Below are positions 50,929-56,268 of a stretch of 64,000 nucleotides of DNA, piece by piece. Both the position numbers and the translations under genes were made by a program. Positions within the stretch are counted from its first letter, which is position 1. Each line of letters begins with the position of its first letter. The DNA is from Podarcis muralis (lineage: Eukaryota), in the NCBI RefSeq assembly GCF_964188315.1, contig NC_135667.1, positions 11,966,001-12,030,000 of the forward strand. Reading direction: 5' to 3'. Under the pieces are notes generated by a model that did no database searches, was not told where the DNA came from, and saw only the letters and a list, made by a program, of their open reading frames with translations.

Positions 50929-51830
50929 ATATGAATGATTGTTTACAATGCCCAGAAGACCAGTATCCAAATAACCTCCAGGATTCATGCATTCTGAAAT
51001 ACATAAGTTATTTGTCCTATGAAGAACCATTGGGGATCAGTTTGACAATTGCTGCTCTCTCTTTTTCTTCTGTCACAGTTTGGGTACTTCAGATTTTCAT
51101 TAAGCACCAGGACACTCCCATAGTCAAAGCCAACAACCGGAGCCTCACTTACACTCTCCTTTTCTCCCTCTTGCTCTCTTTCCTTTGTACTTTATTATTC
51201 ATAGGTCGACCTGAAAAAGTAGTATGTCTCCTTCGACAATCTGTTTTTGGTGTCATTTTCTCCATTGCAGTTTCTTGTGTGTTGTCCAAAACAACAATAG
51301 TGGTCCTAGCTTTCATGGCTACCAAACCAGGATCCAGCATGAGAAAATGGATGGGGAAACAACTGGCCACCTCCATTGTTCTTTCCTGCTCCATGATTCA
51401 AACCACTCTTTGCATTGTGTGGCTCTCAACCTTTCCCCCATTCCCAGATTTGGACATGCACTCCATGACTAAAGAAATTGTACTGGAATGTAATCAAGGG
51501 TCAGTCAGTATGTTTTATTGCGTCCTGGGCTATATGGGTTTCCTGGCCATTGTCAGCTTCACTGTGGCCTTCTTAGCCAGGAAGTTGCCTGATAGTTTTA
51601 ATGAAGCCAAGTTTATCACCTTCAGCATGCTGGTCTTTTGCAGTGTGTGGTTGTCATTTGTTCCAACTTACTTGAGCACCAAGGGCAAATACATGGTGGC
51701 TGTGGAGATCTTCTCCATTTTAGGCTCCACTGCTGGTTTATTAGGCTGCATCTTTTCCCCCAAATGCTATGTTATTTTACTGAGGCCTGAACTGAACAGC
51801 AGAGAACAGCTAATGGGGAAAAAGAGATAA
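50929..51830 (+). CDS. V2R gene D exon 6 (7TM)
   Basis: [14 protein letters not shown]...PKC...MGKKR*; ttttacag acceptor; 902 nt. Confidence 0.96.
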
Positions 51831-52133
51831 AGAAGTTAAAAATGGATGGTAAAGTAAATCTAAGTTTAGCACTGTGCATATCTGAGTGAAAACAATTGGA
51901 AGTGAACATCTAACTGCTGGCATGCTCCATAGGTTTTAATGAGATGTTGTGGTTTCAAACATTGCCTGCTTATGAAACTCTGTGCCTTTGCTCTTGGAAA
52001 TATGATCTCATTAGCAGAAAGTTTAGTGGAAACTCAATGAACTATAGGTGTGAGTTTGAATTACTGCTAAAAATATATAAGTTCATTTTATTTTATGTAG
52101 TTAGAGGTGTTGCATGTTTTTTATTGCTATTCA

Positions 52134-52151
52134 AATAAATACTTTAATAAA
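52134..52151 (+). terminator. Candidate polyadenylation signals of gene D
   Basis: AATAAA at 52134 and 52146, about 300 nt after the stop codon. Confidence 0.5.
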
Positions 52152-52436
52152 TATTTTGACAAGCTTGCTTGTTATTGCTATATTTTTGTATGTGGCATGT
52201 TCACTAAGTTTTGTTTTGTTTTGTTTCAAAGCAAAATTAGGTTGTTTTTAGTTCTGAAAAGATACATCATACCTTTCAGTCTATTTCTTAGACTATTTAG
52301 AAATTCCTTACGCATGTAGTTTTGTTCTAGGTAAGTGATAGGGAGACTTCCTTAGCCTGGGGGACACATGACAGTAGTGGGTGGTGCCTTAGGCAAAGTG
52401 GGGTGGGCAAGAAATGTACCTTTAAGCTTTATACTA

Positions 52437-52634
52437 CAATGGTACCTCGGGTTAAGTACTTAATTCATTCCGGAGGTCCATTCTTAACCTGAAGCACCAC
52501 TTTAGCTAATGGGGCCTCCTCCTGCTGCTGTGCCGCCGGAGCACAATTTCTGTTCTCATCCTGAAGCAAAGTTCTTAACCCGAGGTAATATTTCTGGGTT
52601 AGCGGAGTCTGTAAACTGAAGCGTATGTAACCCG
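52437..52634. mobile_element. Tc1/mariner-type MITE, right TIR missing
   Basis: TA|CAATGGTACCTCGGGTTAAG; internal sequence matches 58281 copy in reverse. Confidence 0.8.
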
Positions 52635-52638
52635 TATG

Positions 52639-52796
52639 CAGTGGCGTAGCGTGGGTTGTCAGCACCCGGGGCAAGGCAAGTAATTTGCGCCCCCTAACCC
52701 ATGGATTTGCGCCCCCTAACCCGTGGATTTGCCCTAACCCCAGATGTTGCGCCCGGTGCGGCTGGCCCCCCCTGCACCCCCCACGCTACACCACTG
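52639..52796. mobile_element. 158-bp non-autonomous hAT element
   Basis: 17-bp TIR CAGTGGCGTAGCGTGGG (1 mismatch); perfect 8-bp TSD CCCGTATG; internal GATTTGCGCCCCCTAACCC repeats. Confidence 0.85.
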
Positions 52797-53275
52797 CCCG
52801 TATGTAATAAGCGTATGTAATAAGCTAATTTCACGTGCACTGAAGTCTCTATCCTCTATGAGGCAAAATACATTATCAGAACATATTCCAGCTACAGGGA
52901 AAGGATGGGAAGCAGGGTTTGTGAGAGGTGCACTCTGGGGGGAGGGGATGTGGCAGAGAGGGGTTGCAGTGTGGGGAGTTTCCCAATGAACAGGTGGAGA
53001 GCCTATGAGGGCTGCATTTGAACCCAGGATATGTATTCCCCCACCAAGGCTCTGATGGAAAGGTAAAGAAGGTGTTGGTCTTAGAACTGCTTGCTCTCAG
53101 TACCCACAGGGATTGGACAACCACACAGAGCATCCCTCAGTGAAATGATGCAAATATTTAATAGAATTCCATCCTCAGTGAGAGAATGTGTTCCAGCAGG
53201 ACTCTCACTGTATTGTATCACCAGAGTTACTGAGTAGAAAGTCACATGCATAAATCTGAAATTAAGCATATATAC

Positions 53276-53630
53276 GCGGGTGGCGCTGTGGGTTAAACCA
53301 CAGAGCCAAGGGCTTGCCGATCAGAAGGTCGGTGGTTCAAATCCCCACAATGGGGTGAGCTCCCGTTGCTCAGTCCCAGCTCCTGCCAATCTAGCAGTTC
53401 GAAAGCACATCAAAGTGCAAGTAGATAAATAGATAAATAGGTACCGCTCTGGCGGGAAGGTAAACGGCATTCCCGTGCACTGCTCTGGTTCGCCAGAAGT
53501 GGCTTAGTCATGCTGGCCACATGACCCGGAAGTTGTACGCCGGCTCCCTCGACCAATAAAGCGAGATGAGCGCCCCAACCTCAAAGTCAGCCACGAGTGG
53601 ACCTAATGGTCAGGGGTCCCTTTACCTTTT
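53276..53630 (+). mobile_element. Sauria SINE
   Basis: Head CGCGGGTGGCGCTGTGGGTTAAACC, shared core, CCTTTACCTTT tail. Confidence 0.9.
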
Positions 53631-54413
53631 TATACTTAAACTGCATGTGCTTATGCCAATAAAGGTAAAACAAACAAATAAAACCCCTCCATGTGTGGAT
53701 GAAAAGGGCAGGGCTCATGAGTGATCTGTATAATACCCTGAGCTGGATTCAGAGTTTAGCATCCAGACAAGGCTAAAGGGGTTTCTTCTTAATACTCTCA
53801 GGAAACAGGAAATTAAATGTGAATTGAATCAGATTTCTACCTCATCCCTATGAGATGTGAATAAGGACCCAGTGAAGAAGCGGATATCTTTGGAACTAAA
53901 ATGATAGCACATGATGATTGGCCCAATGTTTATGTACGAAACCATTCTGGAACTGTACAAAGTCCAAGCATACATCTAAACTGTCATGAACTATCTTCCA
54001 GGCTCCTTCCACTGTCCACTTCCAACTTTTTAAAAAGTCTGCAAAAATATTTTTTACTAAGTTTCCCAAAGGAAAAAAAATAGTTGAAACTATTGATATG
54101 TTGGTTCATATCATCCATTTATTTGTAGGCCATTTTATAACCATGCTCTGCTTAAAGTTGCATAGTATGCAACACGTTAAGCAAACTTAGGCAACCACTA
54201 TGCCAACTGAAAACAGAATAGGAACAAATGTCTCTGTAGCACCGTGGATAAGTGAATACACAACAACAGTGTCAACAAAATTCCAGTACATAATTATATG
54301 AAACTTTAACACAAATCAAACATACTGTAATATTCTAATCCATCTGCTTGAAACCATTGGGAACAAGAACAGGGCGAAATACACAAATTAATTAGATTAC
54401 ATGTAAGGTCTAT

Positions 54414-54416
<3 letters not shown>

Positions 54417-54464
<48 letters not shown>
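54417..54464. repeat. (TTAG)n microsatellite
   Basis: Direct reading. Confidence 0.9.
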
Positions 54465-54465
<1 letters not shown>

Positions 54466-54564
54466 ATTCTATGCTGCCCTTCATTTTAACATCACAAGGC
54501 AGCTTAGAATATAAAAACATAGAATATGTACCATAATAAACAAAAACAATAACTTGCCACACAT

Positions 54565-54681
54565 CTGAAGGTAGCCCTGTTTAGGGAAGTTTTTAATGTT
54601 TGATATTTTATTCTGTTTTTAATATTCTGTTGGGAGCTGCCCAGAGTGGCTGTGGAAACCCAGTCAGATGGGCAGGGTATA

Positions 54682-54735
<54 letters not shown>

Positions 54736-54740
54736 TACTA
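54565..54740 (+). mobile_element. L2 3' terminus with (TAA)n tail
   Basis: Reverse complement of the ends at 38642 and 50265. Confidence 0.7.
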
Positions 54741-54924
54741 TTATTAAAAAGGCCACATATTGTTTAATTAGCCAAAGGCCTGGGAGAAGAGGAAATTTTG
54801 CCTGGCGCCTTAAGATATGTAATGAAGGCACCAGTGCCATAGGCTTGAAACATTTAATCTTATGTGGTGGAGGTTTTCATAGGTCAGATTAATGCCATTA
54901 AATGATTTACTAGTCAACAGACAA

Positions 54925-55053
54925 TCATTTCCTTAATGCTGTCTTCTTTATTAGTTGTTCCCTATTATTCAGCTTGGACCTCAATACTATGATATAGCAT
55001 TTTGGGGGAAATATACAGAGTAGCAATGCAGCCCCAGAAACCAATATAGAAAA
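54925..55053 (-). pseudogene. Orphan V2R TM7 + cytoplasmic tail fragment
   Basis: Hand translation [42 protein letters not shown] (43 codons, open frame), homologous to the end of exon 6; not in the ORF track because it is under 60 aa. Confidence 0.9.
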
Positions 55054-55357
55054 GTATTTGTTCAAATAGCAATAAAAAAACATGCAACATCTCTAATTAC
55101 ATAAAATAAAACGAGCATACATATTTTAAGCAGTAATTCAAACTCACACCTACAGTTCATTGAGTTTCCACTAAACTTTCTGTTAATGAGACCATATTTC
55201 CAAGAGCAAAGGCACAGAGTTTCATAAGCACGCAATGCTTGAAACCACAACATCTTATTAAAACTTATGGAGCATGTTAACAGGTAAATTATCGCTTCCA
55301 ATTGTCTTCACTCAGATATGCACAGTGCTAAACTTAGATTTACTTTACCATCCATTT

Positions 55358-56268
55358 TTAACTTCTTTTTCTCTTTTTCCCCATTAGCTGTTCTCTGCTG
55401 TTCAGTTCAGGCCTCAATAAAATAACATAGCATTTGGGGGAAAAGATGCAGCCTAATAAACCAGCAGTGGAGCCTAAAATGGAGAAGATCTCCACAGCCA
55501 CCATGTATTTGCCCTTGGTACTCAAGTAAGTTGGAACAAATGACAACCACACACTGCAAAAGACCAGCATGCTGAAGGTGATAAACTTGGCTTCATTAAA
55601 ACTGTCAGGCAACTTCCTGGCTAAGAAGGCCACAGTGAAGCTGACAATGGCCAGGAAACCCATATAGCCCAGGACGCAATAAAACATACTGACTGACCCT
55701 TGATTACATTCCAGTACAATTTCTTTAGTCATGGAGTGCATGTCCAAATCTGGGAATGGGGGAAAGGTTGAGAGCCACACAGTGCAAATGGTGGTTTGAA
55801 TCATGGAACAGCACAGAACAATGGAGTTGGCCAGTTGTTTCCCCATCCAGCTTCTTATCCTGGAGCCTGGTTTTGTAGCTACGAAAGCTAGAACCACAAT
55901 GATTGTCTTGGCCAAAATACAAGAAACAGCCACTGAGAAGATGATGCCAAAGGCAGTTTGTTGAAGGAAACATGTCAGCCTTGAAGGTTGCCCAGTAAAT
56001 AGCAATGTACAAAGGAAGGAGAGCACGATGGAGATAAGGAGAGTGAAGGTGAGCTCTTTGTTATTGGCTTTCACTATGGGAGTTTTCTGGTGCTTAATGA
56101 AGATGCAAAGCACCAAAACTGTGATGAAGGAAAAGAAAAGAGCAATAATAGCCAGAGTAAGCCCCAAAGGCTCTTCATATGACAGGAAGGTCACAGCTTT
56201 TGGGGTGCACATATCCTGGTCACTGTTTGGATAATGATCTTCTGGACAGATGAAACAGTCATCCATGT
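55358..56268 (-). CDS. V2R gene E exon 6 (7TM)
   Basis: ORF 55358..56266 [14 protein letters not shown]...MGKKRKRS*; 911 nt. Confidence 0.96.

What the first reader, a model, noticed from the sequence alone, without database searches (positions are those of the whole stretch)
51340..55845. Convergent genes D and E share a near-identical 3' half of the 7TM exon as an inverted repeat: chimeric receptors
Seen: D 51417-51830 versus the reverse complement of E ~55367-55780 differs at only three synonymous sites plus one base. That base is TAA in D and AAA in E, which adds KRS to E. Identity continues about 60 nt past the stop, falls to roughly 90% by eye over the next ~250 nt, and ends at AAATACTTT beside D's poly(A) signal (D 52145, E 55051). 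The 5' halves of the same exon are clearly divergent ([14 protein letters not shown] versus [14 protein letters not shown]). Established: gene conversion homogenises clustered paralogues. Inference: an older segment transfer plus recent conversion, so two receptors with different ligand-side domains carry the same TM4-7 and G-protein coupling face. The ~800-bp arms with a ~2.9-kb spacer could also form hairpin dsRNA on read-through.
Basis: partly seen in the sequence, partly recalled or inferred. Interest (0 to 1): 0.75.

Follow-up and report, generated by a model that had tools for sequence, protein, structure and literature searches.

The report
Copied receptor tail between lizard V2R genes
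Two neighbouring wall-lizard pheromone-receptor (V2R) genes that face each other share almost the same membrane-spanning back half, because about 800 bases of one gene were copied into the other, pushing the recipient's own tail downstream as a relic, and part of the copy was evened out again later; it is a clean but ordinary case of gene conversion in a receptor cluster.

Summary
D 51416-51890 and the reverse complement of E 55307-55781 differ at 4 of 475 positions: three synonymous sites, and TAA in D against AAA in E. The next 232 nt are 90% alike. Homology ends at AAATACTTT (D 52137-52145, E 55059-55051). The 5' halves of the exon differ at 25% of bases.

A permutation test (p<=1e-4), a three-segment model and segment trees all support a mosaic. 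Contigs from three independent DNA studies cross every boundary, so this is not an assembly artefact.

What this analysis adds: E's D-like 3'UTR runs straight into a second, diverged TM7 and C-tail (55053-54925, minus strand). I read this as E's own original exon end. On that reading E is the recipient and D, or a D-like gene, the donor. The first transfer began by homology inside the exon, overran into the donor's 3'UTR, and was rejoined without homology. A later conversion homogenised the core. One individual's D allele carries E-type bases at 51370 and 51374, which hints at continuing exchange.

Not shown: expression, E's exons 1-3 (outside the window), the age of the events, and any hairpin RNA. 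The scan noted a different V2R chimera (unequal crossover) elsewhere in this genome, and the relic itself separately. This is a new member of a known kind, of moderate interest.

The parts
50929..51830 (+). Gene D, last (7TM) exon including stop TAA 51828-51830; the donor-type copy
   Evidence: Open frame. Pfam 7tm_3 E=3e-84 over the full profile 1-251. Acceptor AG at 50927-50928. Matches P0059, a Podarcis muralis V2R model, with one residue different. Aligns end to end with the CaSR 7TM, E=7e-79.
55358..56268 (-). Gene E, last (7TM) exon including stop TAA 55358-55360; the chimeric recipient
   Evidence: Open frame. Pfam 7tm_3 E=2e-84. Acceptor AG at 56269-56270.
50929..51347 (+). D-specific 5' part of the exon (linker, TM1-TM3, most of ICL2). 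Its E counterpart is 55850-56268
   Evidence: 27.6% mismatches to E. pS 0.53, pN/pS 0.38. D groups with C, and E with A/B, in the tree of this part; D-E path length 0.48.
51348..51415 (+). Probable 5' fringe of the older transfer (end of ICL2 and TM4). Its E counterpart is 55782-55849
   Evidence: 7 mismatches in 68. D-E identity is 89% here against 63-79% for the other paralogue pairs. A separate segment is not supported by BIC. X1's D allele carries E-type bases at 51370 and 51374.
51416..51890 (+). Young conversion core, D copy (end of TM4, ECL2, TM5-TM7, C-tail, stop, 62 nt of 3'UTR)
   Evidence: 4 mismatches in 475. Run test p<=1e-4. TM positions by hydropathy.
55307..55781 (-). Young conversion core, E copy
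   Evidence: Same as the D copy. Logan contigs of X1 and X2 enter from E's unique side and stop at 55752, 30 nt inside the core, as a k=31 graph does at a two-copy repeat.
51891..52145 (+). D 3'UTR segment that was copied into E (older layer)
   Evidence: 9.9% mismatches to E. The 3'UTRs of A, B and C cannot be aligned with it or with each other.
55051..55306 (-). D-derived 3'UTR inside gene E (older layer), ending in AAATACTTT 55059-55051
   Evidence: It has no AATAAA or ATTAAA of its own.
55051..55059 (-). Distal junction of the older transfer: last D-like bases, first bases of E's own exon remnant
   Evidence: A-D all read GTGGAG(A/G)TCTTCTCCAT at the matching exon site. Against D's UTR (ATACTTT) this leaves about 4 nt (CTTT) of possible microhomology. 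The junction is spanned without differences by contigs of three DNA studies: 54766-55158, 54793-55222 and 54766-55150.
54925..55053 (-). Relic of a V2R exon end: second half of TM7, C-tail and a stop ([12 protein letters not shown]...KKTALRK*). Read as E's original tail
   Evidence: tblastn to residues 280-316 of D, E=4e-10. Translation and alignment to the tails of A-D give 61-72% nt identity, below the 73-84% among the intact tails. Same strand and order as E, and it starts exactly where D-E homology stops.
52134..52151 (+). Two AATAAA poly(A) signals of D (52134, 52146)
   Evidence: The first is AACAAA in E's copy, and the second lies beyond the junction.
54947..54952 (-). First canonical AATAAA on E's strand after its stop, inside the relic; a candidate poly(A) signal of E (inferred)
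   Evidence: There are no RNA data.
52146..55050 (.). Spacer between the arms, mostly high-copy transposon-derived repeats (52296-52856, 53231-53791, 54540-54913)
   Evidence: Word depths of 10^5-10^6 against about 15-45 for single-copy bins. Repeat hits elsewhere in the window.

Best explanation
D and E are convergent vomeronasal type-2 receptor genes (class C GPCRs) in a wall-lizard V2R cluster. An ectopic, intrachromosomal recombination repair copied roughly 800 bp of D, or of a very D-like gene, into E. The copied stretch ran from about the ICL2/TM4 boundary through the stop codon and about 315 nt of 3'UTR. Copying started by homologous pairing inside the 7TM exon and ran past the end of exon homology into the donor's 3'UTR. 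It was then rejoined to E's exon at the TM7 codons with at most a few bases of microhomology. This is non-canonical termination of gene conversion by end joining. About 360 bp of E's exon were replaced, and E's own last about 43 codons and its downstream region were pushed about 440 bp further on, where they survive as a relic. That layer is now about 10% diverged. A later ordinary gene conversion between the inverted copies re-homogenised 475 bp (0.8% diverged), and short exchanges may still be going on. As a result, E keeps its own TM1-3 and its own exons 4-5, while its sequence from the end of TM4 to the C-terminus is that of D plus a three-residue extension. E has lost D's poly(A) signals and probably terminates in or after the relic. 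Shown: the mosaic, the junction, the relic and their presence in several individuals. Inferred: the polarity, the repair mechanism, the two-step history and E's poly(A) use.
For: Mosaic and breakpoints: p<=1e-4; three segments at 25.2%, 0.8% and 9.9%. Paralogue control: only D and E share a 3'UTR, and all other pairs are 66-90% alike in the exon and unalignable after it. Trees: D-E path length 0.48 in the 5' part against 0.021 in the 3' part, where D+E has 100/100 support. Relic directly after the end of homology, same strand and in exon order. D continues into normal poly(A) signals while E does not. Two layers: Fisher p=0.007 at near-neutral sites and P(0 of 62)=0.0016. Not an artefact: contigs from three DNA studies span the E UTR/relic junction, both 5' borders of the core and D's arm end. 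Shared variation: X1's D has A at 51370 (E's state) and A at 51374, the state of E at the matching position 55823 in X2 and X11. Family: 7tm_3, CaSR as closest solved structure, hundreds of squamate 'vomeronasal type-2 receptor' hits. Mechanistic precedent: mammalian gene conversion that copies beyond homology with the second end is terminated by microhomology-mediated end joining (PMC5104497).
Against: No unconverted orthologue of E was available, so it is not shown that the relic matches E's ancestral tail. The relic is only 111-129 nt long, and within the window it is closest to C (72%), while E's 5' half groups with A/B. The AU test does not formally reject a D+E clade in the 5' half (p=0.0875). 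A separate 5' fringe (51348-51415) is not supported by BIC. The extent of microhomology rests on a paralogue consensus, not on E's real ancestor. The donor could be a D-like gene outside the window. The contigs are short-read graph contigs that break inside the core, so none links a 5' half to a 3'UTR across the 475-bp core. There are no RNA data and E's exons 1-3 were not seen, so function as a receptor is unproven.
Confidence: 0.75

Rival explanations
1. The relic is the last trace of a third V2R gene that once lay between D and E. The shared D/E segment arose independently, by inverted duplication or plain conversion, and it only happens to end there.
Against: It requires that a deletion end and the end of D-E homology fall within the same 9 bases, on the same strand, and at the position where a V2R exon would continue. 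tblastn finds no other remnant of a third gene in the spacer. 111 nt cannot resolve which paralogue is nearest.
Confidence: 0.1
2. There was a single transfer only. The 99% core reflects purifying selection on coding sequence plus chance, not a second, younger conversion.
For: The core is mostly coding. The test restricted to synonymous sites alone is only marginal (3 of 88 against 23 of 232, p=0.067).
Against: The core's identity runs 62 nt past the stop into the UTR without any difference (P=0.0016 at the flank's rate). Pooling near-neutral sites gives p=0.007. The break at 51890/51891 does not coincide with the end of the coding sequence. There are cross-paralogue shared variants.
Confidence: 0.1
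3. Assembly artefact: a collapsed or chimeric assembly created the near-identity or the junction.
For: Near-identical inverted repeats are a classic source of misassembly. No single record spans the whole 5.6 kb.
Against: Logan contigs from three separate DNA studies reproduce the E UTR/relic junction, D's and E's unique-to-core transitions (each breaking 30 nt into the core) and D's arm end, with 0-3 differences. Fourteen DNA runs hold at least 77% of the stretch's words. The independently annotated P. muralis protein P0059 matches D across the border.
Confidence: 0.03
4. The polarity is reversed (E into D), or E is a non-functional pseudogene, so there is no working chimeric receptor.
For: E's exons 1-3 are outside the window. 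There is no RNA evidence. E lacks a poly(A) signal in its D-like UTR.
Against: Reversed polarity leaves the second tail in E unexplained. E's exons 4, 5 and 6 are open and have a good acceptor site. There are no non-synonymous changes in the core, although that is also what recent conversion would give.
Confidence: 0.15

Closest known systems
Interlocus (ectopic) gene conversion among clustered chemoreceptor paralogues, for example GENECONV-detected tracts in fish OlfC/V2R genes (PMC6588630) and V1R genes of mice (PMC2644715)
   Same: A non-reciprocal copy of a few hundred bases between neighbouring paralogues, sharp breakpoints, a mosaic gene tree, and a donor left unchanged.
   Different: Here the copies are inverted and convergent, the first event overran the coding homology into the 3'UTR, and it left a displaced exon tail that shows the direction of transfer. 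For squamate V2Rs, conversion had only been raised as an untested possibility (PMC3590772).
[quoted passage not shown] 2016, PMC5104497). Coupled homologous/non-homologous DSB repair, from my own knowledge of Richardson and Jasin 2000, not re-read here
   Same: One end is homologous. Copying continues beyond the homology shared with the second end. Rejoining uses little or no homology. The net result is a templated insertion.
   Different: Those are reporter events in cultured cells, copied from a sister chromatid. This is a germ-line event fixed in a natural gene family, with a paralogue about 4 kb away in inverted orientation as the template. The break itself and the enzymes involved are inferred, not observed.
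Hybrid V2R genes formed by unequal crossover in the same genome (earlier scan note s1-188865)
   Same: An in-frame chimera of two neighbouring V2R genes in the wall lizard.
   Different: That case joins whole exon blocks through an intron between tandem genes. This one is an intra-exon replacement between inverted genes with both parents retained.
Calcium-sensing receptor and other class C GPCR 7TM domains (PDB 7dd5 and others)
   Same: The D/E exon aligns over the whole 7TM with CaSR, E=7e-79, and is a full 7tm_3 domain.
   Different: D and E are V2R-type chemoreceptors by their nearest named relatives. Their ligands and coupling are unknown.

Membership tests
Vomeronasal type-2 receptor (class C GPCR) | Complete 7tm_3 (PF00003) transmembrane domain in one last exon | tested here: met
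   D E=3e-84 and E E=2e-84, both covering profile positions 1-251 of 251. CaSR 7TM alignment.
Vomeronasal type-2 receptor (class C GPCR) | Cysteine-rich NCD3G linker exon upstream of the 7TM exon | tested here: met
   P0059 (= D exons 5+6) carries PF07562. Exon 5 lies at 48986-49126 in D and 56861-56995 in E, found by tblastn with NCD3G-bearing proteins.
Vomeronasal type-2 receptor (class C GPCR) | ANF_receptor (Venus-flytrap) ectodomain exons, intact | tested here: inconclusive
   D has an open 291-codon exon 3 (45049-45921) that hits PF01094 proteins at E=1e-95, plus two further upstream exons. Only the last about 60 codons of E's exon 3 are in the window (63815-64000), and exons 1-2 are outside it.
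Vomeronasal type-2 receptor (class C GPCR) | Expression in vomeronasal sensory neurons | not testable with these tools
   No listed run is on record as RNA holding the stretch. The one RNA-like run laid held only transposon repeats of the spacer.
Interlocus gene conversion | A run of identity between two paralogues longer than permutation of variable sites allows | tested here: met
   67 concordant variable sites in a row, p<=1e-4, against 6-12 for the other nine pairs. Three-segment model preferred.
Interlocus gene conversion | Different genealogies on either side of the breakpoint | tested here: inconclusive
   Topologies differ: D+C (92/90) in the 5' part, D+E (100/100) in the 3' part. Path length falls from 0.48 to 0.021. 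The AU test of D+E in the 5' half gives p=0.0875, which is not a formal rejection.
Interlocus gene conversion | Non-reciprocal: both loci are retained and the donor is unaltered | tested here: met
   D has a normal exon, UTR and poly(A) signals. E carries the D-type segment plus its own displaced tail.
Interlocus gene conversion | Real in the organism, not an assembly product | tested here: met
   The boundaries and the junction are reproduced in contigs of three DNA studies.
Non-canonical (end-joining) termination of gene conversion | The copied tract extends beyond the homology shared with the recipient's second end | tested here: met
   About 315 nt of D-type 3'UTR lie inside E. V2R 3'UTRs are otherwise unalignable.
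Non-canonical (end-joining) termination of gene conversion | Distal junction with no homology or only microhomology | tested here: inconclusive
   Homology stops at AAATACTTT. Comparison with the exon consensus of A-D leaves about 4 nt (CTTT) in common. E's true ancestral sequence is unknown.
Non-canonical (end-joining) termination of gene conversion | The recipient's own sequence resumes after the junction at a non-allelic position, giving a net templated insertion | tested here: met
   The relic tail 55053-54925 starts at the TM7 codons, about 440 nt further downstream than in an intact exon.
Hairpin dsRNA / natural antisense locus | Inverted arms able to pair within one transcript | tested here: met
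   A duplex of about 770 bp, about -1400 kcal/mol, for either read-through strand.
Hairpin dsRNA / natural antisense locus | A transcript that spans both arms; small RNAs or A-to-I editing | not testable with these tools
   No RNA coverage of the arms. D has two AATAAA signals at its arm end, which argue against routine read-through.

The most novel reading that the evidence does not exclude
The repeated homogenisation of TM5-7 and the C-tail between two V2Rs with different front halves is not neutral. One possibility is that selection keeps a common signalling, dimerisation or trafficking module while ligand-side parts diverge. Another is that the roughly 0.8-kb inverted repeat, through occasional read-through, produces dsRNA that links the expression of the two convergent genes, for example by mutual exclusion in receptor choice. 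The locus would then be a natural domain-swap experiment with a visible repair scar.
Probability: 0.07. Interest if true: 0.7.

Novelty: new member of a known kind. Interest (0 to 1): 0.4.

Why it matters
Chemoreceptor families diversify mainly by duplication and point mutation. Clear cases in which a whole transmembrane module is moved between paralogues are less often documented, and I found none described for squamate V2Rs in the papers searched. In this case the direction of transfer can be read from a displaced exon tail. That gives a germ-line example of a conversion that began by homology and ended by end joining, a mechanism known mostly from reporter assays in cultured cells. Practically, it warns that trees built from the 7TM exon will wrongly make D and E sisters, and that annotation of E's 3' end needs care. 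It does not change what is known about V2R function.

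Tried and rejected
1. Orthologues of D or E in other lacertids, to date the events and to see an unconverted E tail. Three word searches were run: E residues 1-150, D residues 160-318 and D exon 3. 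They returned only paralogue-level hits: at most 72% to E's front half, at most 76% to D's apart from D itself (P0059), at most 87% to the shared tract, and at most 57% to exon 3.

2. Placing the relic by similarity to 120 database tails. The best matches were 70-76% over 37 residues, which is too short to discriminate.

3. Expression. The single reads call included one RNA-like run (X15), and it covered only transposon repeats.

4. Other conversion tracts among A, B and C. Runs of 11-12 concordant sites (p 0.005-0.011 before correction for ten pairs) all fall on the conserved stretch 51539-51563 or 51277-51298. I read these as conservation, not conversion.

5. Reciprocal crossover between inverted genes. 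This would invert the spacer and swap the tails, not duplicate one tail, so I rejected it.

6. Insertion of a D fragment by end joining at both ends. I rejected this because the 5' junction is in frame and in exact homologous register.

7. Copy number from depth. The tool states that summed contig depth is not copy number, so I did not use it.

8. Earlier scan notes searched by the words 'V2R gene conversion' gave nothing on this theme.

Full report
**What the window holds.** There are no N runs. tblastn with D's last exon finds five complete 7TM exons: A 3655-4563(-), B 15625-16533(-), C 27782-28684(-), D 50929-51830(+) and E 55358-56268(-). It also finds one isolated fragment at 54943-55053(-). 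All five exons are full 7tm_3 domains, E about 1e-82 to 1e-84. D's exon aligns end to end with the 7TM of the calcium-sensing receptor, E=7e-79. The nearest named proteins are hundreds of squamate 'vomeronasal type-2 receptor 26-like' entries. P0059, a 324-residue Podarcis muralis model, equals D's exons 5+6 apart from one residue. So the window is from P. muralis or a very close relative, as earlier scan notes also say.

Exon mapping was done exon by exon and by reference. D has open exons at 40559-40855, 41816-42169, 45049-45921 (exon 3, 291 codons), 47154-47384, 48986-49126 and 50929-51830. For E the window shows only exon 6, exon 5 (56861-56995), exon 4 (57878-58099) and the end of exon 3 (63815-64000), because the window stops there. 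A, B and C are tandem on the minus strand, C and D are head to head, and D and E are tail to tail.

**The observation.** The repeat finder gives inverted arms 51013-52122 and 55075-56184, 89% complementary and 2952 nt apart. In the ungapped register, 51416-51890 differs from E at only four positions: 51593, 51677 and 51780 (all synonymous) and 51828 (TAA in D, AAA in E, which adds K-R-S). The 62 nt after the stop are identical. The next 232 nt differ at 23 positions (9.9%). Homology ends at AAATACTTT, at D 52137-52145 and E 55059-55051. The 5' part of the exon differs at 25% of bases, with pS 0.53 and pN/pS 0.38.

**Is it more than chance or conservation?** Among the five paralogues, all other pairs are 63-91% alike in 100-nt bins along the exon, and their 3'UTRs cannot be aligned at all. 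Only D and E share a 3'UTR. A Sawyer-type test on the 371 variable sites gives 67 consecutive concordant sites for D-E, p<=1e-4, against 6-12 for the other nine pairs. Likelihood segmentation prefers three segments by BIC: 50931-51415 (25.2% mismatches), 51416-51890 (0.8%) and 51891-52122 (9.9%).

In trees, the 5' part groups D with C and E with A/B, with a D-E path length of 0.48. The 3' part makes D and E sisters with 100/100 support and a path length of 0.021. The AU test does not formally reject D+E in the 5' part (p=0.0875), so the case rests on the 23-fold contrast in distance rather than on topology. The stretch 51348-51415 is 90% alike, against 63-79% for the other pairs. It is probably the 5' fringe of the older layer, although BIC does not demand a separate segment.

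**The added piece: a displaced exon tail.** Immediately after AAATACTTT, E's strand continues with an open frame whose translation starts [12 protein letters not shown] and ends KKTALRK, followed by a stop (55053-54925). This aligns with the second half of TM7 and the C-tail of every V2R in the window.

I read it instead as E's own original exon end, for four reasons. It lies on E's strand. It is in the right order. It begins exactly where D-E homology stops. And D's sequence continues at that point into two AATAAA signals (52134, 52146), as a normal 3' end should.

On this reading, E's structure is: own 5' exon part, then D-type TM4-7 with stop and about 315 nt of D-type 3'UTR, then own TM7 and C-tail remnant and own downstream DNA. 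About 360 bp of E were replaced by about 800 bp of D-type sequence. This fixes the polarity as D-like into E.

At the matching exon site A-D all read GTGGAG(A/G)TCTTCTCCAT. The junction therefore had at most about 4 nt (CTTT) in common with D's UTR. This is inferred, because E's ancestor is unknown. The relic is 61-72% identical to the intact tails, which are 73-84% alike among themselves, as expected for a stretch released from constraint.

**Mechanism.** The 5' junction is in frame and in exact homologous register, so that end was resolved by homology. The 3' end lies where the two genes shared no homology, so it was resolved by end joining. [quoted passage not shown] The break, the template choice (D itself or a D-like gene outside the window) and the enzymes are all inferred.

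**Two layers.** At near-neutral sites (synonymous sites, the stop codon and the 62 UTR bases) the core has 4 differences in 153. The flank has 23 in 232 (Fisher p=0.007). The chance of 62 unchanged UTR bases at the flank's rate is 0.0016. The break at 51890/51891 does not coincide with the end of the coding sequence. A second, younger conversion of about 475 bp is therefore the better reading. A single event followed by selection keeps about 10% of my belief.

**Is it real in the animals?** Fourteen DNA runs from several studies hold at least 77% of the stretch's sampled words. Logan contigs of three runs from three studies (X1, X2, X11) behave as follows:
- They span E's UTR/relic junction (54766-55158, 54793-55222, 54766-55150) with no differences.
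- They span D's arm end (52045-52460 and 51975-52460).
- They enter the core from D's unique side (51119-51445) and from E's unique side (55752-55940 and 55752-55961), stopping 30 nt inside it. A k=31 graph does exactly this at a two-copy repeat.

No record crosses the whole core, so the linkage across it and the orientation of the spacer rest on the assembly.

One further detail: X1's D allele has A at 51370, which is E's state, and A at 51374. X2 and X11 carry the same change at the matching E position 55823. D and E share no 30-mer in that fringe, so a graph artefact is unlikely. This suggests, but does not prove, that short exchanges continue.

**What the proteins share.** By hydropathy, TM4 is 51363-51434, TM5 51498-51581, TM6 51606-51677 and TM7 51690-51758. 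D and E are identical from the last turn of TM4 through ECL2, TM5, ICL3, TM6, ECL3, TM7 and the C-tail, and E has three extra residues. They differ at three TM4 residues, in ICL2, ICL1 and TM1-3, and in exons 4 and 5, where they are 66-69% identical. 'Same TM4-7' is nearly right. 'Same G-protein face' is only partly right.

**E's 3' end.** E's D-type UTR has no AATAAA or ATTAAA. D's first signal reads AACAAA in E, and D's second lies beyond the junction. The first canonical hexamer on E's strand is at 54952, inside the relic, followed by ATTAAA at 54858 and 54768. E's message, if it is made, probably runs through the junction. This is inference only.

**Hairpin idea.** A read-through RNA from either gene could pair over about 770 bp, at about -1400 kcal/mol. 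There is no evidence for such an RNA. The RNA-like run that was laid covered only the high-copy transposon repeats of the spacer, and D has two good poly(A) signals.

**Literature.** Gene conversion among V2R/OlfC genes has been detected in fish with GENECONV (PMC6588630). For squamate V2Rs it was mentioned only as something that 'could be investigated' (PMC3590772). A search on Podarcis muralis and vomeronasal genes found nothing specific.

**Limits.** I could not obtain orthologues, so the dating and the identity of the relic remain inferred.

**Verdict.** This is a real and well-documented interlocus conversion with an informative repair scar. The mechanism class is known, and a specialist would find the case tidy rather than surprising.

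Noticed in passing
window 52296-52856, 53231-53791, 54540-54913; also 50255-50419, 38641-38800, 42230-42412: The spacer between D and E is mostly very high-copy repeats. Summed word depth is 10^5-10^6 against about 15-45 for unique bins. Copies of the same elements lie in D's introns and elsewhere in the window. These account for the minor inverted repeats I3 and I5, and they are the only parts present in the RNA-like run X15.
   Followed up: partly
window 54700-54760 (minus strand): A long (ATT)n microsatellite lies about 170 nt downstream of the relic tail. Similar triplet runs occur at 42320-42412, 38642-38698, 29826-29894 and 6133-6210.
   Followed up: no
window 40559-51830 (gene D) versus protein P0059: The database model of D (P0059, 324 aa) holds only exons 5-6, yet the window has open upstream exons, including a 291-codon exon 3. 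The public model therefore looks truncated rather than the gene. P0059 also differs from the window by one residue (S/G, about 51507-51509) inside the conversion core.
   Followed up: partly
window 51903-51922 / 55275-55294: There is a 20-nt patch with 8 mismatches inside the otherwise roughly 93% identical 3'UTR layer. It may be a small complex mutation or a template-switch patch.
   Followed up: no
window 51846 and 51870: In run X1 a minority contig shows A>G at 51846 and C>A at 51870 in the 62-nt post-stop stretch that is identical in the reference. In that individual the two copies, or two alleles, differ there.
   Followed up: no
window 51539-51563 and 51277-51298: Short runs of 11-12 concordant variable sites between A and C, D or E (uncorrected p 0.005-0.011). 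I read these as locally conserved TM5/TM3 sequence rather than conversion.
   Followed up: partly
window 35606-36154 (C) and 40559-40855 (D): C and D are head to head, with their most upstream recognisable exons only about 4.4 kb apart. This could be a shared or bidirectional control region.
   Followed up: no
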